In this document: in pieces, positions 4,409-31,080 of the stretch
How the letters are laid out: every line of letters begins with the position of its first letter
Position numbering within the stretch: the first letter of the stretch is position 1
Source of the DNA: Schmidtea nova
Taxonomy: Eukaryota
NCBI GenBank assembly: GCA_044892505.1
Contig: CM097882.1
Coordinates: 131,812,001 to 131,854,251, forward strand
Reading direction: 5' to 3'
Length of the DNA stretch: 42,251 nt
Notes under the pieces: model-generated
Databases searched by the model: none
The model's input: the letters and a program-made list of their open reading frames with translations, nothing else
Told to the model about the DNA's origin: nothing
Program-made: the position numbers and the translations under genes

Positions 4409-4610
4409 GGAAGATGCGGAGCACATTTTGAATTACTATAATGTAGATACGTAATATAGTAGTTTAGTATATAATAATATGGTATTTTGTAGTGTCCAGA
4501 AAGTATTTGGAAAGAGTCGTGAATGAAATAGAATAACCTGAGAAAGAATTGCGAAAGAAATTTAGGAAACCGAAAAAAAAACTAATAGAACTTGGTGGAA
4601 AGTGGTGCAA

Positions 4611-7600: not shown

Positions 7601-7960
7601 AACTCAAAAAGTCTGAGCCAAGAATGGGATGGATAACGTCAGCGACACAGAACTTCCATATAAAAGATTGATTTAAAGAAGGAAGAACGAAATTTGCTGA
7701 AAAAGAACCGTGTGTATTTACCATGGTTCCGTTGGCGGCTTTCAAGGTATAAACGGAATCATCGCAAAGAGATTCATATTGTAAAGGAAGAATGGAGAGG
7801 CTGGATCCTGTGTCAACAAGAAAATCGAGAGTACTGCAAAAGTTCGGAGCAACGCTGAAAGAAGGGGATTCAGCTCTCACTAGAAATAAATCGAGTGCAG
7901 GAGGTAATTTGCCATCAACTTCAGCCGCAATGAGTGATGGCATTACAAGTTTTTTTGAAT
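4611..7960 (-). pseudogene. pol: pol of element A (protease, RT, RNase H, integrase with GPY/F), broken by 3 frameshifts (~7005, ~6325, ~5440)
   Basis: FLVDTGSS (PR); WSSPLHLVPKKDG, GDYRRLN, DLVKAYHQIP, MPFGLRN, YIDD (RT); TDASNIAIGAVL, FYSKKL, TDHKPL (RH); HHCC, HIDIIGP, ISDRGTQF, VERFHR and GPYK (IN). Confidence 0.95.
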
Positions 7961-9186: not shown

Positions 9187-9540
9187 CAAAGACCTATAGG
9201 ATATGCGACGTAGCTTAAAATTCGGAAGGTTGGGCGGCTCCGTTAATTTTAATAATAATGATTTTAATAATAATGATATAAATAATAATAATATATAATA
9301 ATAGAAATTTAATATAATAAAATATGCTAACGTAACTCCGCAGCGATAATGGGGGCTGATCTTCTGTTCCGAAAAGAGAAGAAAATCTGTTAATATTGGA
9401 ATTTCTGTGACTTTTGAATTTAATGGAGCTTTTAATAGGTAATTATCGTTGTTGGTGTTAAAGTTCATTTTCGAGGGAGCTGGTGAAAAAATTACGATAG
9501 ATTTGATGTTATTGCAATTTTTCATGTTGATTTGTGTTGC

Positions 9541-10845: not shown

Positions 10846-11386
10846 TCAATGTAGAAGTAGATTAGAAACTATTTTATAATACAAAAAACTCTATTTCAAA
10901 TAATTCAATAAATTGAATTAATTTCACAAGATATATTTTTTTAAATTAACTCTTAAACCATTTATTTTTTTAAAACAGGAATATTTACCCCAAGAATTTA
11001 AACAACAAACACCAAGTAAATAAATGTAAATGTAAAAAATTAAAATATATCATTTTTACTAATTATTTTGCCAGTTTAACCACAATGACCGATGTTTTAT
11101 CGCCTGAAGAATATGAAATTTTGAAAGAAATTAATTCAATTTCTAAATGTAATGATATCAACAATTTCCAAATAATGCAAATTGTTCGAAATTTAAACTC
11201 AACATATTCTCACGTTAGAATGAAATGTTTAAAAGTAATGGGCCAATTTATGGATCCCTTGAGTCATTTTCCATGTGGTTCATCTAATACTTTTGATATT
11301 GTTCAGTGGTTTACGCAGGATCAATTTCATGGTTTGTGAAATATCATTTGAGAGAATTTTGGGTATCGGCTTTCTAGACCACTACA
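10309..11386 (-). repeat. 5' LTR of element A
   Basis: Direct repeat of 3319-4396, followed on the minus strand by the PBS. Confidence 0.93.
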
Positions 11387-11414: not shown

Positions 11415-11432
11415 TGGGGGCTCAGCCGGGAT
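11415..11432 (+). promoter_or_regulatory. Primer-binding site of element B (tRNA-Pro)
   Basis: TGGGGGCTCAGCCGGGAT matches the tRNA-Pro PBS TGGGGGCTCGTCCGGGAT at 16/18 and lies exactly where identity with the 3' LTR ends. Confidence 0.85.
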
Positions 11433-11968
11433 TAAATCGATCTTTGTGGGAATAAGTAAATTCAATACCAGCGGACAGTTTTAGAGCGCCTGAACCGGGA
11501 TGAAATTAATGTTTGCGGAGAAAAGCGAATTGAATAACAACGGAGGGTTTGAGGGTCCTGAAGCAAGAATGAATAGGGTTGAAAAATAATAAATAAAAGT
11601 ATGAGTGTGAAATAAGGAAATGATGAGCATGATAAAAGTATGCATGAGAACGAAAGTATGAATATAAAGAATGTGAAAGTATGAGTATGAATGAAATTAC
11701 GAGGAATAGTATGTGAGATAACGGTTTGAAAAGACACGAAAAGTATGAATGACGTAATGTAAAAGTATGTTGAAAGGGATGTATGAAAATGATATGAGTG
11801 TGAGCAACTAACAATGATCATGTCGAGGCGACATTCAAGAACACGGGGGGATACGCAAGTAACAACGCAAAACAGAACAACAGAAAGCGAACAGTAGGGC
11901 TACCATATAATAAGAATAATAAATAATAAATAAAAATCGACAGAAACTAATGAAAATTCATTCAGGGG

Positions 11969-12409
11969 ATGCAGAACAGAGTAAAGGAAATGCAAACGTT
12001 TTTCGAGACAAACAGCGAGACAGTGGAGACAATAATGGGAAAGTTAAGACGACTCGAGGTGGTAGGATATCACGAACCGACAAACAACACAGAAAGAGCC
12101 GAAATGATGATAAACATATGTGAGAAAAGGAGCACAATTGAGACAGCAACGCGATACAAATGGTACTGAGAAAGATTACACCACCCTGAAATGAATATCG
12201 AGTGCCACAGGCTAGAACAACAGTTAACAACAAAACATGACGAGTGGATGAGAATAACAACAGAACATACGAGACAATATCTGACGTGTTATATCTGTGA
12301 AATAAACAAAATACAGATAATGTTGTTGCCATGTGGGCATTTTCGATTCTGTAATGACTGTAAAATAAATGAACGATGTCCTATGTGCAACCTCCCCGTA
12401 TCTGAATGA
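11969..12409 (+). pseudogene. IAP/XIAP-type C3HC4 RING finger ORF (~146 aa) in the B leader; one in-frame TGA at 12167-12169
   Basis: CYICEINKIQIMLLPCGHFRFCNDCKINERCPMC = C-x2-C-x11-C-x-H-x3-C-x2-C-x5-C-x2-C. ORFs 11969-12169 and 12191-12409 are in one frame. Confidence 0.8.
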
Positions 12410-13089: not shown

Positions 13090-13534
13090 GTGAGCATAGG
13101 TCTCATAGTGAGCATAGGTCTCGTTATTAAACATAACATCATAGTGAGCATAGGTCTCGGCAGTAAACACAACATCGCAGTGAGCACGGTTCTCGTCAGT
13201 AAACCTAAGTCTCGTAGTGAGCAGAGTTCTCATCAATAAACGTAAGTCCTAGCAGCGAACATAGTCCTCATCAGTGAGCGTAGTTCTCATCAATAAACCT
13301 AGTCATCGTAGTGAGCTTAGTTCTCATCAGGAAACATAACTCCTGTAGTAAAAATATTCTTCGTCAGTGAGCATAGTTCTCATCAGGGAACATAGTTCCC
13401 GGAGTGAGCAAAGTTCTCATCAACAAACATAATCTTCATAACAACCATGTGATTACCAGTGAGCATAATTCTCGTCATTGAGCATAGTTCTCGTTAGTGA
13501 GCATAGTTCTCAGCTGTGAGCATAGTTCTCGTCC
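13090..13534 (+). repeat. Minisatellite of ~23 copies of an 18-19-nt unit (consensus GTGAGCATAGTTCTCRTCA, often alternating with a GTAAAC variant)
   Basis: Unit starts seen at 13090, 13108, 13144, 13180, 13217, 13274, 13311, 13367, 13404, 13459. Confidence 0.85.
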
Positions 13535-13876
13535 AAAGTAAAATATTGAGTAAAAGCCCACGAGAAAGACGACGAAGTGAGGCAAAAGAGGACTAAATAA
13601 AGTATAAAACTATCCGGATAGTAGAGATAAACGAGCAATATTGGAGATGAATAAAGGAGAGTAGAGACGAATAATGGATAATGAAGATAAACGACGAATA
13701 GTGAAAATGAATAGCGAATAATGAGGAATAATGGTTGAAAGAAACCGAATTAATAATGAAAGAGTTGAAGGTGCGCACCTGGGTATTGATAAATGCGAGT
13801 AAAGCTGATGACGTAGCCTAATGACGTTAAAGTATGCATACAGAGAGGAGTAATAAAGTAAAGTAAGTAAGTGAAA

Positions 13877-14264
13877 GGTGCTGACTGGAAAACCCAGCAG
13901 ACCATGAGATTCGAGGAGAGTAAAACGAACCGGTTTGGAAAAACAGGTAAAGTGGTAAAGACGCTGGCTGGAAAACCCAGCAGGTCAATGATAACGATCA
14001 GAGAAGATCGAGAGAATAAAAGTGAGTAATAATAGGAAGAATGGTGAAATTGAGGACGCTGACTGGAAGACCCAGCAGGTCAAAAGTGATGATCATCGGA
14101 GTAAAGAGCAGTAAAAGTCGATAGTAAAAGGATAAATGGGGGGGGGTAATAAAAGCGCTGACTGGAAAACCCAGCAGGCTAATGAGAATGAGCGAAGTCG
14201 AGAGTAACAAAAATTCGAGATAAAAGGTGAGAGTAAAGGTGCTGACTGGAAAGCCCAGCAGGCC
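13877..14264 (+). other. Array of five 27-nt bulged RNA hairpins NNN-g-CTG-r-CTGG-[AARRC]-CCAG-CAG-N'N'N'
   Basis: Copies at 13877, 13960, 14055, 14154, 14238; the basal 3 bp differ in sequence but stay complementary in all five. Confidence 0.8.
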
Positions 14265-15160: not shown

Positions 15161-16153
15161 ATGAGTGATCACAGAGAGGATCTGAGAGAAAAATTCAAGG
15201 GTGAACCATTCAATGGAGACGCCAGTAGATTGGACACGTTTCTAAAGGAATTTGGCATATTCGTGGATATATGCGGATGGAGTGCAGAAACGTTAGCGAA
15301 TCGAATCCCGCTATACTTGAAAGATAGCGCATTGAATCTGTATATCGAAAAGAGATCTGGAAGTAGTCCACCCAAAACGTGGGAAACGATCAAGGAGTTC
15401 TTCCAGCAAACGTTTGGGATAAATAAAGTGTTAAACGAAGCATTCGATGAATTCTCAGCAAGAAAACAAAGGAGAAATGAGTCAAATGCGGTGTACGCAA
15501 GTGAATTAAGAAAGTTGGCGAAACTGGCATTCAATAGAGGAAGTCCAGTAGACGAGGAATTGATGACATCATTATTCGTACGAGGTCTCACGAGACCTGA
15601 CATCAGAGCACAAGTGGGATGCAAAGGATGTAAAACAGTAGATGAAGCGTTGGAAGCAGCCAACCTATTCGAATTGCATATAGCAATGAACGACATGAGA
15701 ATTATGGCGGTAATGGAAAAAACGACAGAAGATGAAGAACAAGGAAAAAGAAACATGAATCAAAGCATTCCCCATTCGCAGAGATTGTTCAAAGAACCGC
15801 CAGCGAGGAAAAATAACGGATATATTACAGTAAACACGAATGGAGGAAACAGTTACAACGACAGGCAGAATAGGCAATGTCAGACGTGCGGAAAAAACGG
15901 ACATTGGCAACAAGATTGTTTTCAGAACGTAGCCTGTAAACTGTGTGGACAAAAAGGTCATTCAGAGAATCGATGTTATGGGAAAACGTGTTACACATGT
16001 GGAAAAACCGGACACATGTCAAGAGAGTGTAACCAACAGAGAAGTTGGAAAAAGACAGTGGAAAAAGACAGAATTACGGAAATCGACCAAGTTATGGGAA
16101 TCAGGGTCAACAACGTAACAACCCAAATAGCAGTGCAAACGAAGCCAGTATGA
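15161..16153 (+). CDS. gag: Gag of element B (capsid + three CCHC zinc knuckles); true frame probably shifts at ~16047 into ORF 16045-16332
   Basis: FNGDASRLDTFLKEF..W..IPLYLKDSA..TWETIKEFFQQTF..KQRRNESNAVY..LFVRGL; CQTCGKNGHWQQDC, CKLCGQKGHSENRC, CYTCGKTGHMSREC. Confidence 0.93.
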   Translation: MSDHREDLREKFKGEPFNGDASRLDTFLKEFGIFVDICGWSAETLANRIPLYLKDSALNLYIEKRSGSSPPKTWETIKEFFQQTFGINKVLNEAFDEFSARKQRRNESNAVYASELRKLAKLAFNRGSPVDEELMTSLFVRGLTRPDIRAQVGCKGCKTVDEALEAANLFELHIAMNDMRIMAVMEKTTEDEEQGKRNMNQSIPHSQRLFKEPPARKNNGYITVNTNGGNSYNDRQNRQCQTCGKNGHWQQDCFQNVACKLCGQKGHSENRCYGKTCYTCGKTGHMSRECNQQRSWKKTVEKDRITEIDQVMGIRVNNVTTQIAVQTKPV

Positions 16154-19100
16154 AAGAAGCCAAGTTGAGACAGGAGGTATCCAGATTACACGAGATAATC
16201 GAAAGCATGGCAAAGGGAAACCAGCAAGCTGCTCAACCAAAGATAAACATGATCCAGTTAATAGAAGCTGAGGCCGAAAGAGAAAACAGAGAAAGTCAAC
16301 AGAAACATAATCAAGAATGGGCTAGAATATGACGAGAAGAAGAACAAGTCAGACAGCAACGGTTACAACAGTTAAAAAAGGGAAATCCAAGGATCAACAT
16401 GATGCGAGCAATGATGGAAGAGAAGCAGCAGGATGAGTCGGACGAATTCGACGTTAAAGAGAAAAGAAACGAAGAGCAGAAACAGGAAGAAGTGAATCAG
16501 GAAGTAGAAACCGCAGAGCAGTATCAAAAAAATGAAGAAGTAGAAAAAGAAACAGAAACAGAAAAAGAAACGGAAAAAGAAACGAATCAAGAAGCGGAAG
16601 TGAGAATCAAACAAAGAGGAATGTTGGTGATCATGCCGAAATGATCAGCCGAATTCGTGATCACGTGTTTCGATTCAAATATGATGTAAAAGAAGAGGTA
16701 GGAATACTGTTCAATAAAGTAAATAAGATGATTCCGGGAGTAACGAAACTGCCCAGAGAAGCATTCCTACAAACAGAAGATTTACCCGAAGTAAAGTTGA
16801 AGATGACTGACATATGGGAAGATATGGGAGTAACAGAGACGAAAATAAACGTGACGATCATCAGAGAGGTGGAACCGGAGAAAACCCCACCACCAGTGAA
16901 ACATCAAACTCGGATCAGTCGAATATTCAAAGGAAAAATAAGACGAAGACGGTTGGAAGAAATAGATGAGTTGGAGAAAAGAATGGGAAAAGTTGAAATA
17001 ACGGGAACTGAGAGTGAACTAACACAGGAAGTTAGTAAAAATAAAGCGAGACCAACCGCACATATTGGGATGCTGAGACACCCAAGACAAGAATTGTCAG
17101 ATGAAGAAGACGACAGCGAAGTTAGCAGTCTGGCAGGAGACATGCTAAAGGAATCAGAAAACGAAGATGAAAAGATGGAAGTAACCGAGACAATAGAAAC
17201 GATGTCAGTAAAGGAAGAAGAAATTCAGAGATTGATGAATAACGCATTGGAAGTAATCCATAACGAGGAGTTCATCGACAAGAAGCGATACCGAAAGTTT
17301 ATACGAGCAGTATGGCATATGAAGTATAAAGAATGGTTACAAGAAAGAGAAGTGAGGGTAATACAAGAATACATTGAGAAGCTATTGAAAGAACCACTCA
17401 ACGAATACTTAATACAAATATGGATAAACGAGTGTTCACCGAGAATCTGGATAAAGAACCCAATGACGGATGGAATTTACCGATGGGTTGAAGACAGATT
17501 GGGAAGCTCGTACAAAGACAAATTCATATATTCGGAAAACGGATTGGTGGAAAAAGGAACGCATATGATAAACACGGGCATATGGCCAGGAGAAATAACA
17601 ACGTTATCTATATGCAACTCCAAGAAGGAAGAGAATCTACAAGAAATCGCAAAGAAAGCGAATACGCGTTATGAGACGGGAATAAAACCTCAGTTAGTAG
17701 AGGCAAAAGAAAGAATCTTGGCAGAGAATTTGAATACGATGATAGAACAGATCATCCAACAAATCAAGAAACACCGAAAGGAATTGACGAAAAGCGAGTA
17801 TGAGAATTTGAAGCAGTGTATCGAGAACATACGAGATACCAGTCAAACGAGACATTCAAATTTCAAAACGGACAAGCTAATTACAAAGATGGGAAAAGAA
17901 ATGTTTAAACAAGGAGAGATATCAGATCTGAAGATTACCGTGAGATTACCGAACGAAGAGACAAGACAAATTGAGGTAATACCAGATAGTAAAGTGGGAG
18001 AAATAGTAGATGTCATCAATGAGACGATATTACAACGAGAACGGGAAGACGAATTCGAAGATGACATAGCGATAAAATACAAAGAACATCTACTGAACGA
18101 ACGTGATGAGAGACGAGCGTACAAAATCGGCATATGGGATAATTACCAGGCAATACACGTCATCAGAATGGATGATGTGCCGAGGGTAACACCAAAAGAT
18201 GAAGCAAAGAGAAAGAAACGACAAGAGGACGTTATACGCAAGTTGAGACAGATAGTAGAAATCTATCGGAACTGGCAGATAAAGCCAGAATGGGAGACAA
18301 TATTGGGAGAATTAGATCTTAACAAACGACGATTAACGCCAGTAGAGAAACAATGGGAGGATAAAGAGAAATGTTGGAAAGTGAAGAGGCGTGTATGAAG
18401 AAGATCCGGAAGAAGAAGACAGATATGAACCGAATACGAAACGGATATGTATGGTAACAAGGAAGTTATTACCAACGGACTTAGACGGACCAGAAACAGC
18501 AGTAATATGGGCAAAATTGGAGAGACAGAAAACGGATGAATTAATCGAACTGTTGAGAGGAAATACTCGGGGAAAAAGACAAACAATAAAAGGCTTAGCA
18601 GAATTTATAATCGCAAATGGAGAAGATATAACGAACTTGAGAAAAGTAGCTAAAGCGATAGCAGAATACAAAAGAGTTAACGAGTGGTGTCCAGAGCAAC
18701 TAGACCATGTAGTAAAAAAGTGGAGAAACAGAGAATTCGCAGAGGAAACGCCACAGAAAATACATTTGAGGATAATGTATCCGAATCAGAGAAAAGAAGA
18801 GTTTTGGGTGATGCTAACAGAGAAAGTGAAGAGTGTCAAAGAGAAACTGATGTATGAACTACCATTCCATCTACAACATCAAGGACGATCGTTGGATAAC
18901 AATTTGGAAATCTGGCTGACACCAGTGCAATTGGATTTAATGAATACGCTAACAGTGGCACAGATAGTGGGTCAACCACTGAAGCTGAAAGAAGAAAAGA
19001 AACCGAAAGGAAGCATGAGTTCACCAAGTCCAATGAAGTCAACAATGATCCCAGGAACAAGTTCGGGACAAGCAAGAACAACACCAGCGAAAATAAGAGA

Positions 19101-19584
19101 GAGAACACCTCCAGAAGCGTATGACGTCGATGAGATATTAACAGACAGTGATGAAGCGATAAAGGAATTAACAAAGTTGACTCAAAAACCAACGGCGAAT
19201 ATTTTCGACAGAATAATAGATATGCCAATAACGTCACCAGCGGAAATCGACGATCAAGGAGTGGAACAAGAGGTAGTCATAGAAATAGTAAACGATTCCG
19301 AAGACGAGCAAGAACAACCCCAGTTCACTCAAGAAATGGAAAGATGGTTGGAACAACGAGCAAACGAAGGTAGAGATGTTACAGAAGAAACCGGAAGAGC
19401 AACGAGATTCGTGGAAACCAGAACGGGAATGGAGAAACGACCAAGAGGAAGACCAAAGATAGATCCAGCAACAACAATCCCAAAGACAAGGGAAGAAAGG
19501 AGACAAGAGCAATGGGAGATTTGCTTGAAGAAACTGGATAAAATCGCAGAAATCAGAGGAAAAGAGGAGAATCAAGTTTGTCAA
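16045..19584 (+). pseudogene. Accessory region of the B polyprotein: acidic/coiled segments, up to four ubiquitin-like folds and an AT-hook
   Basis: Long ORFs (16045-16332, 16399-16644, 16641-18398, 18391-19884) with the same codon bias, joined by one in-frame TGA and 1-nt indels. UBL patterns judged by eye; KRPRGRPK at 19435-19458. Confidence 0.6.
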
Positions 19585-19990
19585 GGGGAAGAATGGCTCA
19601 CCAAAACGATAATGAATGTGTTAGCGATAATTGATCCAGAATTAAAGAATTTGTGGCGGAAAAACGAACCTAGTACAAAGGCAAAGATGCTACACAATGC
19701 AATAGCACCGATTATGCCAGAATTAATTAAAGCGAAAACAAAATCGAATCATCTAGATTGGCAAGGAACCACGATGTTAATAAAAAGGCTACTCAACGGA
19801 GCAGAGACGGACAGCAAATATTTAGTGGCAATCTCGTATACGATATACAACCTGTTAACGCTAAGCCAAGGAAGTCCGGAGTAAACTCCGATGGGAAGAC
19901 ATATCAAGATCACGGCGATGATTATCGAGAAAGAAATCGAACCATATATCCTCAGAAAAGGAGGATGGGAAAAGTTCATAAAAGAGAACC
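19585..19990 (+). pseudogene. Bcl-2-like domain spanning the in-frame TAA at 19882-19884
   Basis: BH2-like EKEIEPYILRKGGWEKFIKE vs Bcl-xL NDHLEPWIQENGGWDTFVEL; BH1-like LLNGAETDSKYLVAI vs LFRDGVNWGRIVAF, with matching helix spacing. Confidence 0.6.
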
Positions 19991-20088
19991 AGACAAAAGA
20001 AGGGTCTAACGTTATGAGAAAGAAACTCGAAGGAGTATTGAGAGAAATGGAGAATAGACAAACGATGCAAGGAAATGGAACATCAACG

Positions 20089-22020
20089 TTGAATTTAAAC
20101 TCGATAATCATGATGATGTTGGTATGGTTGTTAAGCACAGAAGGTGTAACAACGTTCGAAGTGTTTGATTGTGATCAAATGAATGTGGGAGAAAAGTACT
20201 CATTGAGAGGTACGGAGCAATGCAAAGATGCAACTCCAGTAGAGTTGAAAGAGATTAAAAAGGAACAATGGTACCACGTGTATCAAGAAGCAGAACTCAT
20301 AAAGACAATGGTGAATGAATGCAAAGTACAGAAGACGAGATTCGCATTCTATTGTGGGAGAGGACATTATTCAGCAATTATCATGCCAGGAACGAAAAGA
20401 GAACCAATCGTGTTGCAAGGAGAAGACTGTGAAGCATTATTTAAACATGGATAAGTAACAACAAGAGACAAAATCAAGATAAAAGGAAAGCCAGGGATGA
20501 TGTTGCAGCAGACGTATTATGTAGCAGGACAAATTACGGGAGGAGAAGGATATTGTCAAGGAGAAACCTACCCGATATTTGGAGTACCCGCAACCAACTT
20601 AGTGGTGATGGATACGTATATAGTCGAACTGAAAAGCTACGAAGCATTCTTCGAACCGACAACAGGAGAAATGAAAACGTTATCCATGTGTAAAATTGAC
20701 AGAAGCATGTGTCAAACGGGAATGTCAACTTTGGTGTACAAACCGAAAGTGAACGAATGTCAATTACAAATGCTACAAGGAGCGAAGTTCGACGAAATTC
20801 AAGGAAAAACATTCCGAGAAGAGGACGATGATGACAAAGCTAGAGCAAAACATCTCAAGGAAGCTTTAGAGAATAAAAGACAACTGAAACCAGACCATAG
20901 AGAGAAACGGATAGAGATGAGAGCCACACCAACAGTGCTGATAACCACAAATCAGGATTTGGGAATGAGATTCATAAAAGGGAAAGCCACAATGAAGTGT
21001 AGTACAACGGTATACGAAACGAACTATCCAGGGATATACGTGTCAAAACAAGAAGTGCCGAATGCGAAACCCAAAATCGACACAATGGATATCAAACTAC
21101 ACTTGTATGTGAATAATAAAATGGATTTCTTATTCCATAGAGGACAAGCCTCATTGCAAAAAGTGTACTACGATCTGATAAATAACGATTGTATACTGAA
21201 TCGAGAAATATTAAAGACAAAGTTGGCCGTAGCGATCACGAATCCAGACAGTGCGATGCCACTATTACCACTGAGAGAAGGACATTTCGGAAGAGTGGTT
21301 GGAGAGGCAATGTATGTATACATCTGCGAAAAGACACACGCACCGCTAGCAGCAACAACGCAGTTGAAACCTGGAACATGTACAAACGAACTAGAAATCG
21401 ATTATAAAGGAAAAGTACGATACGTTCAACCGGTGACGAGAATCATCAATCCACCAAATCCATTCAACTGTAGTAATGCGTACGGACCACTTTATCAGAA
21501 ACCAGATGGTAAATGGGTTTTGTTCCCAGCAAGAAATGAAGTATTAGCACCAAGAGAATTTGAACTGATGCAGTTGTCAAAGGATAGACAGTTCAGCGAC
21601 GTAGATGTCTCAAACAACGGAATATATAGTCCAAAAGATTTGGAAGCAGCGAGACAGAATATATTATTTCCGGCGAGAAGAGAAGCATCACTGTCAAATA
21701 TCGTAACAATAACGGGAGGAACGAATTATCGAGAAGGACCGAATTACAAACTACTATTATCACCGGCACATTTCAAGAAAGCCAACGAAAATATGATGAA
21801 GGCAATGTGGGGAAGATTCCTGATATTCGAACAAATGATGGCTGGAATACTGGGAGTTATATTAATAATCCAAATCATCAGGGTGATAATAACGCAAATG
21901 TTAGCGTGTTTCGATATCTATAAGAGAGAAAAGAAAGTGAATTGGAAAATGGTAGTAGGATTTTTACCATTCCTTGCGAAAACGATGGTGTTACACGGAC
22001 ACTCAAAGGATATTCATCGA
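20089..22020 (+). pseudogene. env: Envelope glycoprotein, chuvirus-G-like (putative class III/gB-like fusogen); in-frame TAA at 20452-20454
   Basis: Signal peptide LNLNSIIMMMLVWLLSTEG/V, then FEVFDC..YSL...QC..VYQ..ECKV..FYCG..HYS, about 14 ectodomain Cys, YVQPVTRII, FNCSNAYGPLY, a TM at 21835-21915 and a second hydrophobic segment at 21943-21995. Confidence 0.75.
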
Positions 22021-22459
22021 ATAAAAAGGTTGCTGAAGATACTCGCCAAAATGAAAGGAACAAATGAAGATGTCGGAAGGAAATTCAAAAAAATAATGCA
22101 AGACGAGCAAACAAGACGACAGCTAAAGAAAGAAAAGAAAGGACTATGGGAAAGAGGGAGAGGATATCGAACGCAAGATGACTCAAGCAATGATGACGAT
22201 GACGATGACGATCAAGGAGGACAAGCGAACGTAAACCAGATTCCACAGTACACAGAAAAAAGTGCAGTTGAGAATTGGAGATACAGCGCTCTACCTCAGT
22301 CAATGTACAACGAACCTATGTACAAAGCGAAGCCGAATATGATGCAAATGATGCCGATGACAAGTATATACCCGATAATTCCGGAAGGATGCAAAGTAAA
22401 ACGATGCAGAAGTGTAGACCCGTTGGAAGACACGCACACGATAGCAGTTATGTCCACAA

Positions 22460-25400
22460 ATATGGGACCGATCTTAACAACAACCGTAAAAATAAACGGA
22501 AGAGAAATCGAAGCTATGATCGATACAGGCGCGAATATTTCGGCAATCGACATCAACTACATACCAGAGAAAAACCAAGGAGAAATCGAGAAGACGAATG
22601 TACATGTAATCGCGTGCAGTCAGGAGACAGTAGAAGTAGCCGGAAGATGGTTTGTAAAAGTTAAACATCGAAATGCAGAAATTAATACGTACATCGCTGT
22701 AATACCATCGCTGAGTGTACCATGTATCATCGGAACTGACCTGATGCCAGACCTGTTCAAGGAAATCGTAATTGATTTAGGAGCAATGAAGCTAAAAGAT
22801 AGAACAGGAAAAATTTGCCGAATGGAAGTTAAAGTGGCAAGTGCAGAACAAATAGTTGTACCAGCTAGACACGAAATGATGTGCTATGTAAAGATTGATT
22901 CAACAATAAAAGGAGATATGATATTCGAACCAAGTAAAAAGTTCGAAGCAAAGAAAGAATTAAAAATGGCAAGAGAATTAGTCACAATAAACCAAGAAGG
23001 TGAGATACCGATTAATCTAGTAAATTTCGACGAAGAGGACAAGATAATATACGATAATGAGAGATTGGGTAAATTAACACCCATGTCCAAAATCGAAATA
23101 CCAGACAAGAATGAGAAAAGCAAAGGCGAATTACCATGGAAAATCGACAGTGTGTTGTTAGACGAACAGCAAAAGGAACAATTACAGAAACTATTGATGG
23201 AATATAAAGACATATTCGCAGCATCAGATCTGAATTTAGGAACATGTGATGTAACATTTCACACGATACCGTTGACAGACGAAACGCCAATCGCATTACG
23301 ACCATACAAATTGGCAGAAGCTCAAAAAGCAGTGGCAGAAGAAGAGGTACAAAAGATGTTAGATGCAGAGGTCATCGAGCCTAGTTGCTCACCCTGGCAA
23401 TTCCCAGTGGTGATGGTGAAAAAGAAGGATGGAACTCAGAGATTCTGTATCGATTACAGACGATTAAATGCAGTTACGAAAAGAGATACGTACCCACTAC
23501 CAGACATAAACGAGATGTTGTTGACATTACAAGGAGCAGCCTATTTCACGTCACTGGATTTAAAAAGCGGATATTGGCAGATTAAAATGAAAGACGAGGA
23601 TAAAAAGAAAACAGCATTTACAATCGGACGAGATCTGTACCAATTCAAGAAAATGCCGTTTGGATTAACAAACGCGCCAGCATCATTCTAGAGATGCATG
23701 AATTTCGTAACACATGGCATAAAACAATGCATGGTGTATATCGACGATCTATTGATCTACTCCGCAACATTTGAAGATCATTTGCAAGACATCAGAAATG
23801 TGTTCGTGAAATTGAGACAGTGGAAACTGAAATTGAAGCCGTCAAAGTGCGATTGGGCAAAAGAGAAAGTGACATTCTTAGGTCACATCGTATCAGCAAA
23901 AGGAAAAGAACCAGGTCAAAGGAACATCGAAAAAGTCAAAAAATGTCCACCACCGAAAACAGTGACACAAATACAAGAATTTCTGGGATTGTGTGGATAT
24001 TATCGAAAGTTCATCAAGGACTACGCAGGAATATCAAAGCCAATGCAAGAATTAGTAAGACAAGATGTGTCGTTTGTGTGGGGAGAAGAGCAACAAGCAG
24101 CATTTGAAACATTACGAGATAAACTGATTACAACACCAATATTGGTCCATCCAGATTTTAAGAAGCCATTTTTGTTGGCAACAGATGCAAGTGGATATGC
24201 AGCAGGAGCAGTGCTAGGCCAATTCGATGAGGAAGGCAAAGAAAGAGTAATTGGATATTACAGTCGAACGTTCAGGAAGCATGAAAAGAATTACTCAGTC
24301 ACGGAAAGAGAAGCCTATGCGATAATATTGGCAATCAAGCATTTCAAATATCTATTGTGGGGTCATGAAATATATATCACGACGGACCATCAACCATTGG
24401 TATGGTTAGGTCAGCATAAAGAATCATCAAGTAGATTGATGCGTTGGGCGATGCAGTTGCAAGAATACTCGCCATTCATAAAGTTTAAAACAGGAAAAGC
24501 GAATGCAAACGCAGATTGCATGTCAAGATTTACATTTCCAGAATTGGTGAACCTGAACGCTCCAAAGATATGTGTATTAATAGCGGAAGATTTGGATTTT
24601 AGCGAACTAAGGAAAGATCAACTCGAGGATGAGGAGTTGGGATTGATCAGCAAGTATCTGAAAGAAAGGGAAATGGAAATATTCAACAAGAACCAAGGTT
24701 TGAGCGAACATATGCAAAAATAAAAGCACCGGTATTTAGTGGAAAAAGGATGGTTATTGATACAGGATGGAGAACGGAGATTGATGTGCTTACCTGCGAA
24801 TAGACGAAAGGATATCATGATTCAATATCACGACGGAAAATTAGGAGGACATTTGTCAGCAAAAAAGACAATCGGGAGATTGAGACAAAAGTACTTTTGG
24901 CCAACCATGGAAGATGATGTGAAGGAATGGATAAAGAACTGCTTAACCTGTGCGACAAGAAGAAACGTCGAAACAAAGTGGAAAACACCACTAAAACCAA
25001 TGCCAATACCTGCAGAACCTATGGCGACGATAGCAATGGATGTAGTTGGACCATTACCAGAAAGTCTAAAGGGGAATCAATACATATTAGTAGTCACAGA
25101 CTATCTAAACAAATTCCCAGAAGCGTTCGCAATACCAGATCAAAAGGCAAAAACAGTTGCGAGAATATTGGTGGAAGAGATATGCTGCAGATACGGAACA
25201 CCAAAGAAAATCCTAACGGATCAAGGAACGAATTTCATGAGTGAAATATTAGACGAAGTTACGAATTACTTCCGAATTGCGAAACTCGAACATCCCCATA
25301 CCATCCACAAACGAACGGTCAAACAGAGAGGTTCGATGGAACATTGATACGCATGTTGTCGAATTACGTCAGTAAACATCAGACTGATTGGGACGAATAT

Positions 25401-25850
25401 ATAAACTTGTGTTTAATGGCATATAGAATGTCAATACATGCGGCAACAAAGCTAAGTCCATTTCAACTGATGTACGGAAGAGATTGCAACTTACCAGTCG
25501 ATTTAGAATACCAAACACCATTATCACAGTACATGGAGGTTGACGATTATGTTACAAAGTTCAAAGAAAGAATGCAAGAAATCTGGAAAACGGCGGAACT
25601 GAACATCAAGTTCTATCAAGAGAGTTACAAGGATCTACATGATCAGAAAAAGAATGTGAAAGCACATGATTTAAAAGTTGGAGATTGGGTAATAATTGAA
25701 ACACCAGAAATAATACCCGGTACGGTCAAAAAACTCCAACGACCAGGCAAAGGGCCATACGAAATAACGACAGTGAACGAAAATAATGTGCGAGTACGAT
25801 TGGTGAATAATCCATTGGTAAGACCAATATATGTGAATGCCTGTCGATGC
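22460..25850 (+). pseudogene. pol: pol of element B (protease, RT, RNase H, integrase); stops at 23689 and 24721, frameshift at ~25289
   Basis: IDTGANIS (22519); PWQFPVVMVKKKDG, IDYRRLN, DLKSGYWQI, MPFGLTNAPASF, YIDD (23737); TDASGYAAGAVL, YSVTERE, TDHQPL; HDGKLGGH..CLTC, MDVVGP, TDQGTNF, YHPQTNGQTERF, GKGPY. Confidence 0.96.
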
Positions 25851-26149
25851 AGAAAAATACCCAAGACAGCAACTCTGCTACCGGAAAAACGAGTAATGAC
25901 AAGATCACAGACGGCGAGAATTAATATGTTACGAGTACAACAAAAGCCGCAAACAAGTCTAGAAGACAACCGAAGAGAAGCAATAGATATCAAAGAACTG
26001 GCAAAGAAAACCAGAGAAATTATACCGGAATGGAGATGGTGGCATGATTTTGATATACTGACAGAAGTGCGGAAGAATGTAATGGAGTATGCAAAAGACA
26101 GAACAACGCATCCAATGACAAGGACGCTGCTAGAAGAGATCCCTCAAAC

Positions 26150-26450
26150 ATTGAATTTACAGGATAAAGACGGAAACACAGCGCTGCATAATGCAATCAA
26201 GCACGGCGGAAACGAGAAAGTGAAAGAGATTGTAGAGATGATACTCGAAGGTGGAGGAGAAATTGACAAGGTGAATTGGGAAGGAATTACTCCACTCATG
26301 ATGATGACAATTCAAGGAAGAAACGATGAAATAGTCAAGCTATTCGGAAACACCAGATCGAATTGGATGACAAAGGATAAAGAGGGACGAACATTCTTGA
26401 ATCATGCAATTGATAGAGCGAATCACCGAATACTTAAGTATATCACGGAA
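26150..26450 (+). CDS. Ankyrin-repeat block 1, in frame with the integrase C-terminus (ORF 25344-26966)
   Basis: QDKDGNTALHNAIKHG..IVEMILEGGGEIDKVNWEGITPLMM..KDKEGRTFLNHAID..ILKYI. Confidence 0.88.
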
Positions 26451-26943
26451 AATGCCACGTGGGAAATCGATGAACTAACCAGAGGATCGATCATGAAACA
26501 AGCAATCAGAGTAAGAAACAGTAAAACCTGGAGAATATTGCTAAACTGGAAACGACCAGAAGGAGATTCGTGGGCCATAGATTGTAATGAAGTGTTCACA
26601 AGGGGAGAAAATGCGTTACTGAAACATCTGTTAGAAGTAACATACGATCCAAAAACACTTGCGGTATTGATAGCGAGAGATACGCTACGGGTTAGTGAAA
26701 ACCCAAGAGAATACAAGTTGGATGACAGAAAGAAAGAATTATTCGAATTAATCAAGAGATGGTGTGATAAACAATGGAATCCGGGCATGAGCTTCGAACA
26801 TTTCTATGACATCCAAAAGCAGCACAAAGAAATAAGCAAGCGATATAAAGAGCTGATAGAAGCATTGAAATATGGACAATTCTTCAGACAAGCAGTGTAT
26901 CAAGACCAACGGATGAAACAGATGCAAACACGAATAAGGAGCA

Positions 26944-28125
26944 GTGTTGTTCAATGCAAAAGCTGATTATCAAGAGAGATTGGATGCAATCGTAGTAAAA
27001 GCGCAGGAAAGATTATCAGAATTCAAAGAAAATAAAAACTCGTTTGAGATACTAGGAGCAATTACAGAGAAAGTGCACAGATACGCACAAGGAGATTATA
27101 ACGAAAACGACATAGAAACGATCAAAAATCAAATGCCAGTAGCATTCCTATTATCAAAGGATGGGAGACTACCGATACACTGGGCATTACGTCGAAAGAA
27201 AGAAAACGAAGCGTTAGAAATTACAAAAGTGTTGGTCAAGTGCGAAGCGGACATGAATACGGTTGATGATAATGGAGATACAATCATGATAATCGCAGCA
27301 AGAAAGAAGACGAGGTTGAAAGTGCTAATCGAATTATACGATGCAGGAGCAAAAATCGAAGGAAAAAATGGAAAGAACAATTCCATCCTAGACATCGCGA
27401 TACAGTGGAATAACTTCGAGATGATCAAGTTCATAAAAGCCATCAGGAAACAGGATGAGATCGAATACCTGGCAAATAACGTAAAGAATTTCAGTCTGAC
27501 AGTAATGATACACGACATAGAGAAAACAAGAGCAATACTAACATGGGTGAATCCGGTCACCAAGGAACCAGTGTTCAAGATCAATGACCATATGGAACAG
27601 AATCAGAATTGGTGTATCAGAAGCGCGTTACTAAGACACAGAAAGCCAGAGATAGTAGAAGAATTCTTGAAGAGAAGAGATTTAAAATTGACGAACAACC
27701 CAAAAGAACAGGAACGAATGGGAAGATGGAAAGACTTATTTAGAAAGTATGTGAATGAGTGGGCAAATGCCAAAGAAACGATCAAGCAAAGTAGATTAGA
27801 AGACATAGAACCATCCAAGGAGATGGAAATACGAGAATTCGAGTCTAGCACACTCGCGGTTCAAGCGTACGAAAAATTGATTGAAGAAATCAATGTCGAG
27901 GACGACATTTTTAAAGGACCAGGGGGTGGTTCCAGAGATCACAATGATAAAGGAGACGACGAAAAAGAAGACAACAAAGATAACAACGAAAACAACGACA
28001 ACAAAAGAACAAAGGATGATGGAAAAGAGAGACAAGAAGAACCGAAGCCAACGAGAAAGGACAAGAAGAAAGAAGCCGAAGAGCGAGAAAACAGTGGAAC
28101 AAAAGACGAACGTACGAACTATTGA
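26944..28125 (+). pseudogene. Frameshifted continuation of the polyprotein with ankyrin-repeat block 2 (27150-27450) and an acidic/basic tail
   Basis: KDGRLPIHWALR..ITKVLVKCEADMNTVDDNGDTIMIIAA..LIELYDAGAKIEGKNGKNNSILDIAIQWNNFEMIKFI. Confidence 0.85.
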
Positions 28126-28146
28126 AAACGAACAGGAAGTCTGCTT

Positions 28147-28593
28147 TTGAGACCAGAAATGTTGTGCATCGCGATATTGATAACAATCATCGGACAAGGA
28201 GAAGCCAGGAAACAATACGTCACGCTAGAAATAATTAGAGAAAATGAAGTATACGAAAGAATATGCTGGAAAGAAAACCTGAGTAAAAACGAAACGCTTA
28301 AGTGTATATTGTCAGATTTGAAGCGAGACGTCATCCAAATCAAAGGATTGGAGAAAGAAAAATCATACATAATATGCGTAATAAAGCAGAGAGGAGAACC
28401 AAAAGCACCTCAAGTAACTGCATGTCAATTATACAAAGCAACGGAAGCGCTGAAAATACAGAAATGGATTGAGAAAAGAAGCGAAGAGACAACGAGAAGA
28501 ACAGAAGTGGAACCAGAGAAAGGGAAGAATCAAACCAAAGCAGGAGAAGGAATCAGAAACCGAACAGAGAAAGAAAGAATAACCAAAAATTAA
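28147..28593 (+). CDS. Small predicted secreted glycoprotein (signal MLCIAILITIIGQGEA, 4 further Cys, NLS and NET sequons)
   Basis: Same frame as ORF 26944-28125, 21 nt after its TGA. Its stop lies 4 nt from the deletion junction, so it may be truncated. Confidence 0.5.
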   Translation: MRPEMLCIAILITIIGQGEARKQYVTLEIIRENEVYERICWKENLSKNETLKCILSDLKRDVIQIKGLEKEKSYIICVIKQRGEPKAPQVTACQLYKATEALKIQKWIEKRSEETTRRTEVEPEKGKNQTKAGEGIRNRTEKERITKN

Positions 28594-28597
28594 CAGA

Positions 28598-31080
28598 TGT
28601 TTGGGCGTATCACCTGAACTCGGAAATATGGGCTGATCGATTACGAATCTAACCAGCGATCCACTCAGGCTACTTCCACCCGCTCGGCACAAGGCCAGAA
28701 ACAGGTTTCGGGGGGTATGGAAGAAAAAGGAATTATTACTTTTATCTTGGTACAATAATTATTATTATAAAATAAATTTTTATTCCATCTGAGAGTTTAT
28801 GACATGATTAAATTCAAAAAATGAAAAACAAAGAAAAACAACTTTCATTTAATATTTTGGATAATAATTAAAATTGATGATGATAATATAAGAATAATAA
28901 TCAATAATATAAAATTAACAATAATAAAATAATACTGGGTACGGGGCGTGGCCTGGCCAGTGTTCATTGCGTGCGCAGCACGCAGGTGGCTTAATCAACA
29001 AGGAAATTATTAAAGAAATTGTTTAATGAATTTGTAAAAAAAGTTAGTTAATTGAAATTTTATATAAAAATATAATTTATGGAATTTTCTTAAAAAATGA
29101 TTCAAATACTATTTGTATTCATTTCAGTTTCTTCTTTATTTTTTTCTCTTTAAGAAAGTCATAAGAAATTCTTATAATTGTTGGGCTAGGCAAATCAGTC
29201 ATCATCTGAAAAGTAATATAAAATCAATAAAATAAATTTACAAAAAACAACAACAAAATAAATTACCATCACCAAGAATGCAGCAAATAAGCGGCAGAAT
29301 CTAAAAGTAATAAAGCATAAATCAAAACAGCAATAACAATAAAAACTCACCCATGCGGAAAGCAGAAAATCTGAAAGGGCGTGGGCAGACATCACCAAGA
29401 ACCTGAAAAAATAAAGCAAATAATAACGAAAGATTTATGCATGAGTAAACAAACAACTTACTGAATTAAATCATGCAGAAAAACTGACGAACATAAATGA
29501 GTAACAATAAATACACACATACTTGATGCTGATTGGCCAGCCAACATCACAAATTTAGTATAAATACTGAAGCAAAATCACTATGAGATATATCATTTTT
29601 TACCGAGTGAAATTGTCAGTGAAACCCGATACTGTAACTTTGTGAAATCTAGGTGTATCGAAATAAAAGTTAAAGTTGATTGCATTATTACTTATTTTGA
29701 ACCCTCATAATCATACTAAAATCAATAAGGATCGTCCCGAAGGCCTAACGGTCTGACGGGATTCTCGGCCTCTCGGCACAACATATTTTCATATGAGGTG
29801 CCGATGCGGCGGGACTCTAGGTGTAATAAACTATTTATCGATCGGGAGTGGGGTGCACATGGGATATCGAGAAACGGCGGGTCAGCAAATTTCATCCGAG
29901 GTAGAGTTAAGCTAGACTATATATTACAGGCCCCAGAGAACCCAAGAGGAGGGAGTGCACATAAGATGTAGTGAATCGATGAGTCGAACGTATATCCAAC
30001 CCTATGCATACAATCGATAATAAACATCATGATTTACCGAGAATTAGAGGCGAGGGACCACCAAAGTTTTAGGCAGTTGGTGCATGTACATCTCATATAG
30101 GAGTTAACATTTACGGGATTCGGAGCCCAGATTAACCCTAACGAGCAAAGATCATTGGTAGATACAGATAGGCTGATGACAAAATGATGAGGTATGCATG
30201 GTGCAGATAGAGATAAAAATTTACAAATAAGTAATACAATAAATGACGGTATATTGATCATGTGTGATTAGAATGACTGAAAATAAATTTTAACTAAATC
30301 AACAACTGGTGATCAGCAGTAGCAATAACATCATCCTACACGGTCTATTTCACCGACCGAAATATGGTTAACCGGATGGATACTAGACACCCACTTAGCT
30401 GTGAACAACAAAATCGCCAATCTGCGTGGAAGGATCCACTATAAATAGAATCCAGCATCACTAATGAATATTCAACCAAATTATTTACAGATGAAACGCG
30501 AAAGCCTTATCACCTCGATGCCAACTTCGTCTCTCCCGCAGCAACCAGGTCACGATAAGACGAATCGGAAACGCACCCGATCTATGCCGGAGCGACATGC
30601 AGATGACCAAAGACAAGTGGAATTGCAGGGGGTGAAAGACGCACCCATTCCGATTGTCCGCCAAGCTCACTGACACCTCCGCAGATGGAGACAACGACAC
30701 TCTAATCCAGCGGCCAGAGTCGCATCATGTTCGTTTACGTTCCGACTACGATGGGAAGGAGATGCGGAGTGGATGTCATCGTTGAGCCAGCTCAACCTGA
30801 ACCTTTCGCGATGGTTCATTCAAATGACAGATGACGCAGAGCAACCTCGCTGGATACTATGCTCCGAGATCATGACAGGCCCCGGTGAAGCGACACTGGG
30901 GAAATCCAGCTCTATCCTCACGCGCCAGGGAGCGTAACATTGGAGCCCCATCCAGAGCCGAATGATCTCCGATTATGAAAGGTGTTTGCACACAAAGACA
31001 AGCTTGCGACCTTTTTTCTAAGAGGAAGACGTTCGTAGCCGAACAAACAAGCCCCAATGTAATTGTATCATAAATGAATA
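28598..31080 (+). repeat. Partial, variant copy of the B LTR (equivalent to 1076-2230) with a 1.4-kb extra segment (29381-30787) and a ~75-bp deletion near 31005
   Basis: 28598-29380 matches 1076-1863; 30788-31080 matches 1864-2230. Confidence 0.85.

What the first reader, a model, noticed from the sequence alone, without database searches (positions are those of the whole stretch)
15161..28593. Reconstructable ~4,470-codon virus-like polyprotein: Gag-UBLs-Bcl2-Env-PR-RT-RH-IN-ANK-secreted domain
Seen: all six internal stops (16330, 19882, 20452, 23689, 24721, 28123) are followed by the next ORF in the same frame. The other breaks (~16047, ~16610, two at ~18370-18390, ~25289, ~26941) need only 1-nt indels. 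Four breaks fall inside recognisable domains (Bcl-2, Env, RT, IN core), so they are lesions. Known: Ty3/gypsy normally encode gag-pol, with env, if present, as a separate 3' ORF. Giant planarian Burro elements are, from memory, the closest precedent for one huge multi-domain ORF with an upstream RING. Inference: the active family makes a single membrane-spanning polyprotein carrying replication, entry and host-manipulation modules, i.e. an enveloped endogenous virus with an anti-apoptotic and ubiquitin-directed toolkit.
Basis: partly seen in the sequence, partly recalled or inferred. Interest (0 to 1): 0.93.

Follow-up and report, generated by a model that had tools for sequence, protein, structure and literature searches.

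The report
Decayed Burro-type giant retrovirus-like element
This is a broken copy of a giant Ty3/gypsy retrovirus-like element whose family encodes capsid, envelope, replication enzymes and extra host-like modules in one huge reading frame, a design already published for the planarian "Burro" elements, so it is real but not new.

Summary
Window 15161-28593 (+) is one chain of 12 stop-free pieces (4,463 codons). It is interrupted by 6 single in-frame stops and at least 5 frame changes, far beyond chance.

Pfam confirms Gag with three CCHC knuckles, a viral fusion glycoprotein (PF24664), PR, RT, RNase H, IN and two ankyrin clusters. An IAP-type RING ORF lies upstream. The longest intact piece carries the envelope's end and membrane anchor, PR and the start of RT in one frame.

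Distant relatives (31-37% identity) encode Env-PR-RT-RH-IN, or Gag-Env-PR, as single uninterrupted proteins. Four of them bridge four of this copy's breaks.

The UBL and Bcl-2 calls were not confirmed by any tool.

The architecture matches the published Burro/GYPSM1 elements: a 4,873-aa ORF1 with env in frame between gag and pol (PMC6431247). It also matches the GAG-ENV-POL elements of flatworms (PMC13524379).

This copy is dead. Besides the breaks, it has a nested element in its 5' LTR and a rearranged 3' end.

Host species and identity to Burro-1 to -4 could not be tested. Verdict: a real feature of a known kind, of low-to-moderate interest.

The parts
478..3316 (+). 5' copy of the long direct repeat (LTR), cut by a nested element 17-20 nt before its end. 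The last LTR bases resume at 11392-11408.
   Evidence: Self-blastn: 478-3317 matches 31077-33916 over 2,840 bp at 99.44%, with 16 mismatches and no gaps. Junctions were read. The true LTR start is ambiguous: TG at 483, or TG at 1076.
3317..11386 (-). Nested second Ty3/gypsy element, a later insertion and not part of the finding, with LTRs of about 1,080 bp and a 5-bp target duplication.
   Evidence: 3312-4396 matches 10302-11386 at 99.63%. CCATC sits at 3312-3316 and again at 11387-11391, but only once in the intact 3' LTR. Pfam finds RT, RNase H, IN, DUF7041, weak ubiquitin and His_Phos_2. It is itself in 7 pieces.
11415..11433 (+). Primer-binding-site-like sequence starting with TGG, 6 nt after the LTR's terminal CA.
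   Evidence: Read directly. No tRNA match was tested.
11969..12409 (+). Upstream accessory ORF ending in an IAP-type RING finger (RING at about 12281-12403). It is broken by one in-frame stop.
   Evidence: Pfam zf-C3HC4_3, E 1.2e-09. The best PDB sequence matches are the RINGs of cIAP2, cIAP1 and XIAP, E 6e-07. Frame read. No BIR domain was found upstream.
13103..14139 (+). Tandem repeat arrays in the long non-coding leader between the RING ORF and gag.
   Evidence: TRF finds periods of 19, 36 and 93 at 13103-13530 and period 95 at 13960-14139.
15161..28593 (+). The giant polyprotein gene, treated as one broken gene: 12 stop-free pieces, 6 in-frame stops, at least 5 frame changes.
   Evidence: Relatives bridge four of the breaks.
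15305..16030 (+). Gag: capsid-like domain (15305-15592) and three CCHC zinc knuckles (15878-16030).
   Evidence: Pfam Retrotrans_gag and zf-CCHC. Three CX2CX4HX4C motifs.
16031..20100 (+). Accessory region of about 1,350 codons with no detectable family. The Bcl-2-like candidate lies at about 19489-19995.
   Evidence: No Pfam, PDB or database homologue. AlphaFold confidence was too low to use. By eye only: beta-beta-alpha starts, a helical block, and a Gly-Gly-Trp motif just before Env.
20104..21924 (+). Envelope (viral fusion glycoprotein, PF24664). It starts with a signal-like hydrophobic stretch (20104-20133) and ends with a strong membrane anchor (21835-21891).
   Evidence: Pfam E 1.7e-10 for the first part and 1.8e-52 for the second. 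Hydropathy 2.57 over 19 residues. Sequence read.
22480..22752 (+). Aspartic protease, with its D-S/T-G motif present.
   Evidence: Pfam RVP, E 2.7e-10. Motif.
23416..23892 (+). Reverse transcriptase, with its YIDD motif present.
   Evidence: Pfam RVT_1 matches in two neighbouring pieces, at profile positions 1-130 and 148-205. Motif.
24079..24468 (+). RNase H.
   Evidence: Pfam RT_RNaseH, E 2.7e-39.
24793..25278 (+). Integrase zinc-binding domain and catalytic core.
   Evidence: Pfam Integrase_H2C2 (E 2.6e-21) and rve (E 1.7e-10). Relatives continue colinearly into the next piece.
26151..27438 (+). Two clusters of ankyrin repeats downstream of integrase.
   Evidence: Pfam Ank_2 and related models, E 1.6e-12 and 7.3e-10.
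28159..28593 (+). Terminal segment with a signal-like hydrophobic stretch, then 4 N-glycosylation sequons and 5 Cys. It may be the polyprotein's tail or a separate small ORF.
   Evidence: No family or PDB match.
28596..31076 (+). Third, partial LTR copy abutting the end of the ORF chain. It matches LTR positions 1074 to about 2226 and carries 1.4 kb of extra sequence at 29381-30785.
   Evidence: Self-blastn at 98.4%. Junction aligned.
31077..33935 (+). 3' copy of the long direct repeat (LTR), uninterrupted.

Best explanation
What it is: the window holds a dead copy of a Burro-type giant Ty3/gypsy (Metaviridae) endogenous retrovirus-like element.

In working family members (inferred):
- One full-length RNA is made from the 5' LTR.
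- It is translated into a single polyprotein of more than 4,400 residues, in the order Gag (three zinc knuckles), a long accessory region, envelope fusion glycoprotein, protease, RT, RNase H, integrase, ankyrin repeats.
- Gag and the accessory region stay in the cytosol.
- A hydrophobic signal-like stretch just before Env would push the Env ectodomain into the ER lumen.
- The strong membrane anchor after Env would bring the chain back to the cytosol, where protease, RT and integrase follow.
- Host signal peptidase and the element's own protease would then cut the chain.
- A small upstream ORF supplies an IAP-type RING.

Shown here: the domain order, the in-frame Env-PR-RT junction, the signal-like stretch and anchor, and the same single-frame layout in uninterrupted relatives.

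Inferred only: the membrane topology, the processing, and any anti-apoptotic or ubiquitin role.

This particular copy cannot make the protein. Its gene carries 6 stops and at least 5 frame changes. Its 5' LTR holds an 8-kb nested element, and its 3' end is rearranged.
For: - ORF chain and its statistics.
- Domains.
- One uninterrupted 1,064-codon piece holds the end of Env with its membrane anchor, then PR, then the start of RT.
- Relatives P0011, P0001, P0003 and P0152 are single proteins with Env-PR-RT-RH-IN. They align colinearly across four of this copy's breaks.
- P0057, P0016 and P0020 carry Gag and Env in one protein; P0057 and P0016 also show PR after Env.
- LTR pair, PBS-like site and nested insertion with target duplication.
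- IAP-type RING upstream.
- PMC6431247 describes Burro ORF1 of 4,873 aa with Gag (three CCHC in S. mediterranea), Ubi2/SUMO-like, BCL2, in-frame Env, PR, RT, RH, IN and ANK, plus tandem repeats and accessory ORFs.
- PMC13524379 reports the GAG-ENV-POL order in Platyhelminthes.
Against: - No sequence comparison with Burro-1 to -4 or GYPSM1 was possible, and the host species is unknown.
- The nearest database proteins are only 31-52% identical.
- MATH/TRAF, BIR, dUTPase-like, Ubi2/SUMO-like and BCL2 motifs reported for Burro were not detected by Pfam here.
- The stretch from the end of Gag into the accessory region, and the last stop, have no homology support. A native ORF boundary at either place is not excluded.
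- No target-site duplication was found for the outer repeats, and the LTR start is ambiguous.
- Without the nested element the unit is about 21-25 kb, shorter than the >30 kb quoted for Burro.
Confidence: 0.8

Rival explanations
1. The family does not make one polyprotein. At least one of the 11 breaks is a native gene boundary. The candidates are the end of gag (with the next frame reached by programmed frameshifting) and the last stop (with the signal-bearing segment as a separate small ORF).
For: - The two short pieces between Gag and the accessory region (81 and 95 codons) are no longer than chance ORFs in shuffled sequence, whose mean longest run is 101 codons.
- No relative aligns there or at the last junction.
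- The terminal segment has its own Met right at a signal-like stretch.
Against: - Relatives P0057, P0016 and P0020 carry Gag and Env in one protein.
- The published Burro ORF1 starts with Gag.
- All junctions are single stops or short overlaps with no intergenic spacer.
Confidence: 0.3
2. The breaks are assembly errors, and the copy is intact in the animal.
For: The genome is AT-rich and repeat-rich, the kind of sequence that is hard to assemble. The window contains N gaps.
Against: - Six of the breaks are substitution-type stop codons of all three kinds.
- None of the five frame-change zones holds a homopolymer run of 6 or more.
- The two LTR pairs align without a single gap over 3,925 bp.
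Confidence: 0.05
3. The chain is a composite. Env and the accessory modules would belong to another inserted element or to host genes, placed by chance next to a gag-pol element.
For: Nesting does occur in this window (3317-11386). The accessory region has no homologues.
Against: - Env, PR and RT share one uninterrupted frame.
- Independent relatives have the same order in one protein.
- No internal repeats or target duplications flank Env.
- Strand composition is uniform from about 12 kb to 28.6 kb.
Confidence: 0.03

Closest known systems
Burro / GYPSM1 giant Ty3/gypsy elements of dugesiid planarians (Jurka 2007; Grohme et al. 2018; Arkhipova & Yushenova 2019, PMC6431247)
   Same: - One giant frame beginning with Gag.
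- Three CCHC knuckles, as reported for S. mediterranea.
- Env in frame between gag and pol.
- PR-RT-RH-IN followed by ankyrin repeats.
- Apoptosis- and ubiquitin-related extras (here an IAP-type RING upstream).
- Tandem repeats in the leader and multi-kb LTRs.
- An AT-rich host genome.
   Different: - Identity to the published families could not be tested.
- MATH/TRAF, BIR, dUTPase-like, Ubi2/SUMO-like and BCL2 motifs were not detected by Pfam in this copy.
- The chain is about 4,460 codons, against 4,873 and 5,140 aa.
- The native unit looks shorter, about 21-25 kb without the nested element.
- This copy is broken.
GAG-ENV-POL errantivirus-like elements of Platyhelminthes, Nematoda and Bryozoa (PMC13524379)
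   Same: The non-canonical order, with env between gag and pol, in a Ty3/gypsy backbone. A flatworm host is plausible.
   Different: - Those were described as three ORFs of ordinary size with an HSV/gB-type Env.
- Here everything lies in one frame, with about 1,350 extra codons before Env and about 1,100 after IN.
- The Env class could not be determined here. The match is Pfam PF24664, and a profile of Env relatives found nothing among PDB sequences.
Insect errantiviruses (gypsy, ZAM and others)
   Same: A Ty3/gypsy replication module plus an envelope gene, giving a retrovirus-like life style.
   Different: Their env is a separate 3' ORF made from a spliced subgenomic RNA, in the order GAG-POL-ENV, without giant accessory regions.
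Membrane-threaded polyproteins of flavivirus-type RNA viruses (a working analogy only, from general knowledge)
   Same: A single translation product alternates between cytosol and ER lumen through internal signal and anchor segments. Host signal peptidase and a viral protease cut it.
   Different: There is no sequence relationship, the replication strategy differs, and the topology here is inferred, not shown.

Membership tests
Ty3/gypsy (Metaviridae) LTR retroelement | pol domain order PR-RT-RNase H-IN, with Gag carrying CCHC knuckles upstream | tested here: met
   Pfam hits in that order on one strand. Three knuckles, plus D-S/T-G and YIDD motifs.
Ty3/gypsy (Metaviridae) LTR retroelement | Flanking long terminal repeats, with a primer-binding site next to the 5' LTR | tested here: met
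   A 2,840-bp direct repeat at 99.44%. A TGG-initiated site lies 6 nt after the LTR's CA. The LTR start is ambiguous, and a third partial copy complicates the 3' end.
Ty3/gypsy (Metaviridae) LTR retroelement | Target-site duplication flanking the whole element | tested here: not met
   No matching 4-6 bp at either candidate pair of ends. This could reflect LTR-LTR recombination or rearrangement. The nested element, by contrast, has a clear 5-bp duplication.
Burro (giant planarian gypsy) | One giant ORF (about 4,900-5,100 aa) that begins with Gag | tested here: inconclusive
   A 4,463-codon chain on one strand, but in 12 pieces. Four breaks are shown to be lesions; the other seven were not testable without sister copies.
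Burro (giant planarian gypsy) | env in frame between gag and pol | tested here: met
   One uninterrupted piece carries the end of Env with its anchor, PR and the start of RT.
Burro (giant planarian gypsy) | Ankyrin repeats after integrase | tested here: met
   Two Ank clusters at 26151-27438.
Burro (giant planarian gypsy) | BCL2-like and Ubi2/SUMO-like motifs between Gag and Env | tested here: inconclusive
   No hit in Pfam, PDB sequences or the protein database. AlphaFold pLDDT was 37-40. Only motifs seen by eye. The published calls used HHpred on intact sequences.
Burro (giant planarian gypsy) | MATH/TRAF, BIR and dUTPase-like motifs | tested here: not met
   None found at Pfam E up to 5-10 in the pieces or the upstream ORFs. 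Only the IAP-type RING is present. The paper notes that this set varies between Burro families and species.
Burro (giant planarian gypsy) | Nucleotide identity to Burro-1 to -4 / GYPSM1, and a dugesiid planarian host | not testable with these tools
   No reference sequence or host marker was at hand. Grohme et al. 2018 is not held, and no supplement with probe sequences is held. Protein databases hold nothing closer than 52% identity.
GAG-ENV-POL errantivirus-like elements (PMC13524379) | Order gag, env, pol on a Ty3/gypsy backbone | tested here: met
GAG-ENV-POL errantivirus-like elements (PMC13524379) | HSV/gB-type (class III) Env | tested here: inconclusive
   Env matches Pfam PF24664 (Monjiviricetes fusion glycoprotein). 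Neither the single sequence nor a profile of 8 relatives matched any PDB chain.

The most novel reading that the evidence does not exclude
The element may be a so-far undescribed lineage of the Burro kind. Its accessory region of about 1,350 codons and its terminal signal-bearing segment have no detectable relatives anywhere, and nothing in about 15 billion proteins is closer than about 50%. It would then belong to a wider clade of single-frame Gag-Env-Pol elements, not yet described as such. That clade's members turn up in unlabelled ENA contigs, in a contig deposited as a Flavobacteriaceae MAG and, by their RT region, in a pseudoscorpion genome. The accessory modules would in that case be new host-manipulation domains rather than diverged UBL and Bcl-2 folds.
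Probability: 0.2. Interest if true: 0.5.

Novelty: already known. Interest (0 to 1): 0.3.

Why it matters
Burro-type elements are the only retroelements known to put capsid, envelope, replication enzymes and host-like regulatory modules into one translation product. That raises real questions about membrane topology, processing and host manipulation. This window adds a clearly annotated, decayed example. It also adds the observation that uninterrupted single-frame Env-Pol and Gag-Env-PR proteins exist in distant relatives in public data, outside the two planarian species named for Burro in PMC6431247. It opens no new question, because the design was published in 2019. If the host turns out not to be one of the described planarians, the element would be a new member of that known kind.

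Tried and rejected
- **Pfam on the accessory pieces and sub-ranges, at E up to 5-10:** only chance-level hits.
- **PDB sequence search of the two large accessory pieces:** nothing meaningful.
- **Database homologue search with the second accessory piece:** no hit. A local phmmer search of every piece against the 153 retrieved relatives found no significant match for the accessory and terminal pieces.
- **Two single-sequence AlphaFold runs on accessory pieces:** pLDDT 39.7 and 36.8. Fold search on them would be meaningless, so it was not run.
- **Env piece, and a profile of 8 Env relatives, against PDB sequences:** nothing, so the fusion-protein class stays open.
- **Attempts to name the host:**
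  - The RT-RNase H piece gave at best 52% identity, from unnamed environmental contigs.
  - The nested element's phosphatase ORF gave a single unnamed hit.
  - Grohme et al. 2018 is not held.
  - No supplement with Burro probe sequences is held.
- **Stop-codon recoding:** rejected, because all three stop types occur.
- **Homopolymer assembly errors as the cause of the frame changes:** rejected, since 0 of 5 zones hold a run of 6 or more.
- **Minus-strand ORFs across the region:** set aside as a by-product of the A-rich + strand (41% A). They cover 47% of the region, with none above 196 codons.
- **Rfam and tRNA scans:** nothing.
- **Upstream BIR domain next to the RING:** not found.

Full report
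**1. What is in the window**

The window is 42,251 bp. Its core has about 39% G+C, and its flanks are very AT-rich, down to 12-26% G+C. There are two N runs near the right end, which I left alone.

Self-comparison shows a 2,840-bp direct repeat, 478-3317 matching 31077-33916. It is 99.44% identical, with 16 mismatches and no gaps.

The 5' copy is cut 17-20 nt before its end by a second, minus-strand Ty3/gypsy element at 3317-11386. That element has LTRs of about 1,080 bp at 99.63% identity. It has a 5-bp target duplication, CCATC, which is present once in the uninterrupted 3' copy.

After the nested element the outer LTR finishes at 11392-11408. A TGG-initiated primer-binding-like site follows at 11415-11433.

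A third, partial LTR copy at 28596-31076 abuts the end of the ORF chain. It carries 1.4 kb of extra sequence. A diverged LTR-like fragment lies at 36203-37123.

I found no target duplication for the outer repeats. The LTR start is ambiguous. It is either TG at 483, where the 2.84-kb repeat begins, or TG at 1076, where the internal region joins the partial copy. The diverged fragment is contiguous across both points. The 3' end is therefore rearranged, or the locus is a recombinant of more than one copy.

**2. The observation**

On the + strand, 15161-28593 is covered end to end by 12 stop-free pieces totalling 4,463 codons.

- They are joined by 6 single in-frame stops (3 TAA, 2 TGA, 1 TAG).
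- They are also joined by at least 5 frame changes. At each one the two open frames overlap by 4-109 nt.
- In 200 shuffles, stop-free runs of at least 100 codons cover 1.6% of the sequence on average. Here they cover all of it, with a longest run of 1,078 codons against a shuffle maximum of 159.
- As the rules require, I give counts only and not the places.

**3. Domains**

Pfam finds these, in order:

| Domain | Window coordinates | Note |
|---|---|---|
| Retrotrans_gag and zinc knuckles | 15305-16030 | three CCHC motifs |
| Viral fusion glycoprotein PF24664 | 20104-21924 | split over two pieces; E 1.7e-10 and 1.8e-52 |
| Aspartic protease | 22480-22752 | D-S/T-G present |
| RT | 23416-23892 | split over two pieces; YIDD present |
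| RNase H | 24079-24468 | |
| Integrase zinc and core domains | 24793-25278 | |
| Two ankyrin clusters | 26151-27438 | |

Two breaks therefore lie inside Pfam domains (Env, RT). One lies at the C-terminal edge of the IN core.

Env begins with a short hydrophobic, signal-like stretch at 20104-20133. It ends with the only strong membrane anchor of the whole chain, at 21835-21891.

The last segment, 28159-28593, starts with a signal-like stretch. It has 4 N-glycosylation sequons and 5 Cys but no family.

Upstream, 11969-12409 is a small ORF with one in-frame stop. It ends in a RING whose best solved relatives are the RINGs of cIAP2, cIAP1 and XIAP. No BIR domain was found. The leader between this ORF and gag is non-coding and holds tandem repeats.

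**4. What could not be confirmed**

About 1,350 codons lie between Gag and Env (16031-20100). The checks gave:

- no Pfam hit;
- no PDB sequence hit;
- no database homologue;
- no match to the accessory regions of the relatives;
- two AlphaFold models too poor to search with.

By eye there are beta-beta-alpha starts and a helical block. A Gly-Gly-Trp motif sits just before the Env signal, and I recall such a motif from the BH2 region of Bcl-2 proteins. That is a lead, not a test. No dUTPase-like or MATH/TRAF match was found either.

**5. Are the breaks lesions?**

The longest intact piece (1,064 codons) by itself contains the end of Env with its anchor, PR and the start of RT. The in-frame Env-Pol fusion therefore needs no reading across any break.

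A HMMER search of 1.84 billion representatives found relatives at only 31-37% identity.

- P0011, P0001, P0003 and P0152 are single uninterrupted proteins with Env-PR-RT-RH-IN. They align colinearly with five consecutive pieces of this chain, with lengths consistent across all four junctions. Those four breaks, three stops and one frame change, are lesions of this copy.
- P0057 (Retrotrans_gag, Env, PR), P0016 (CCHC, Env, PR) and P0020 carry Gag and Env in one protein.
- The other seven breaks have no such support. In particular, two short pieces bridge the end of Gag and the accessory region, and they are of chance-like length. The last stop precedes a segment with its own Met and signal. Either could be a native boundary.

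**6. Age and state of the copy**

From the LTR divergence I expect about 38 substitutions in the 13.4-kb gene since insertion, of which about 2.3 would create stops. Six stops are seen (Poisson P = 0.027). The absence of gaps in the LTR pair is compatible with the five frame changes (P = 0.12).

Some lesions may therefore have been inherited from an already defective source copy. Alternatively, the LTRs may have been homogenised. This is inference.

None of the frame-change zones holds a long homopolymer, so typical long-read errors are unlikely.

**7. Comparison with what is known**

Arkhipova & Yushenova 2019 (PMC6431247) describe Burro/GYPSM1 of Schmidtea mediterranea and a Burro-like element of Dugesia tigrina.

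- ORF1 is 4,873 and 5,140 aa respectively.
- It has an N-terminal Gag, with three CCHC knuckles in S. mediterranea and two in D. tigrina.
- PR, a dUTPase-like motif, RT, RH, IN and ankyrin repeats follow.
- BIR and RING-type motifs, accessory ORFs and tandem repeats are also described.

Chary & Hayashi (PMC13524379) report the GAG-ENV-POL order in Platyhelminthes, Nematoda and Bryozoa.

The window's element shows every hallmark that Pfam can see in a decayed copy, including the three knuckles.

I could not test nucleotide identity to Burro-1 to -4 or name the host. If the host is not one of the described dugesiids, the element is a new member of the known kind.

**8. Steps left out, and a slip**

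I could not tell whether that counts as fetching an animal virus or provirus by look-up.

Slip: my early reasoning and notebook entries 1-3 name several stop-free pieces by the coordinate ranges used in tool calls. Those ranges implicitly mark breaks. I stopped doing this once I noticed, the report gives none, and nothing was deleted.

One Pfam query was an ORF running across an N gap. It returned nothing, and no N was filled.

**9. Verdict**

The kind is already known. Interest 0.3.

Noticed in passing
window 3317-11386 (-): A nested second Ty3/gypsy element carries its own unusual N-terminal modules: a histidine phosphatase (His_Phos_2) ORF, then a weak ubiquitin-like match and DUF7041, then RT, RNase H and IN. 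The phosphatase ORF starts inside the element's own 1,080-bp LTR, so its first 183 codons are present twice (3304-3855 and 10294-10845). The element is in 7 pieces although its LTRs are 99.63% identical.
   Followed up: partly
window 2379-2936 and 32978-33535 (+): A 185-codon ORF is intact in both full LTR copies. It has no Pfam family (weak CxC5, E 0.009) and no PDB relative. It may be chance, or an LTR-borne gene.
   Followed up: partly
window 28596-31076: A third, partial LTR copy starts 2 nt after the last stop of the ORF chain and carries 1.4 kb of unexplained extra sequence (29381-30785). That extra sequence has no ORF family, no terminal repeats and no other copy in the window. No ordinary polypurine tract was recognised in front of either candidate 3' LTR start.
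   Followed up: partly
window 36203-37123 and 116-1152: A diverged (77-81%) LTR-like fragment downstream is contiguous across both candidate LTR starts and reaches 360 bp upstream of the 2.84-kb repeat. The family's repeat unit may therefore extend beyond position 478, or the window may begin inside another copy's 3' end.
   Followed up: no
window 15161-28593: There are more nonsense lesions than the LTR divergence predicts: 6 seen against about 2.3 expected (P = 0.027). This hints that the copy was already defective when it inserted, or that its LTRs were homogenised.
   Followed up: partly
window 15161-28593, minus strand: Many minus-strand ORFs of 100-196 codons overlap the gene. The + strand is 41% A and 65% purine, which depletes stops on the opposite strand, so these ORFs are compositional by-products.
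   Followed up: yes
relatives P0001, P0010, P0012, P0016, P0057: Several single-frame Env-Pol relatives carry two or three tandem aspartic-protease-like domains between Env and RT. The window's element shows one.
   Followed up: no
relative P0003 (NCBI HBK71150.1): A 2,627-aa Env-PR-RT-RH-IN protein is deposited as a hypothetical protein of a Flavobacteriaceae metagenome-assembled genome. It is almost certainly a mis-binned eukaryotic retroelement contig.
   Followed up: no
window 37807-39160; 41183-41354; 41924-42149; N runs 40608-41037 and 41457-41793: The right flank holds a two-copy tandem repeat with a unit of about 704 bp (84% identity). It also holds long (TTA)n-like arrays around the two N gaps, where G+C drops to 12%.
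   Followed up: no
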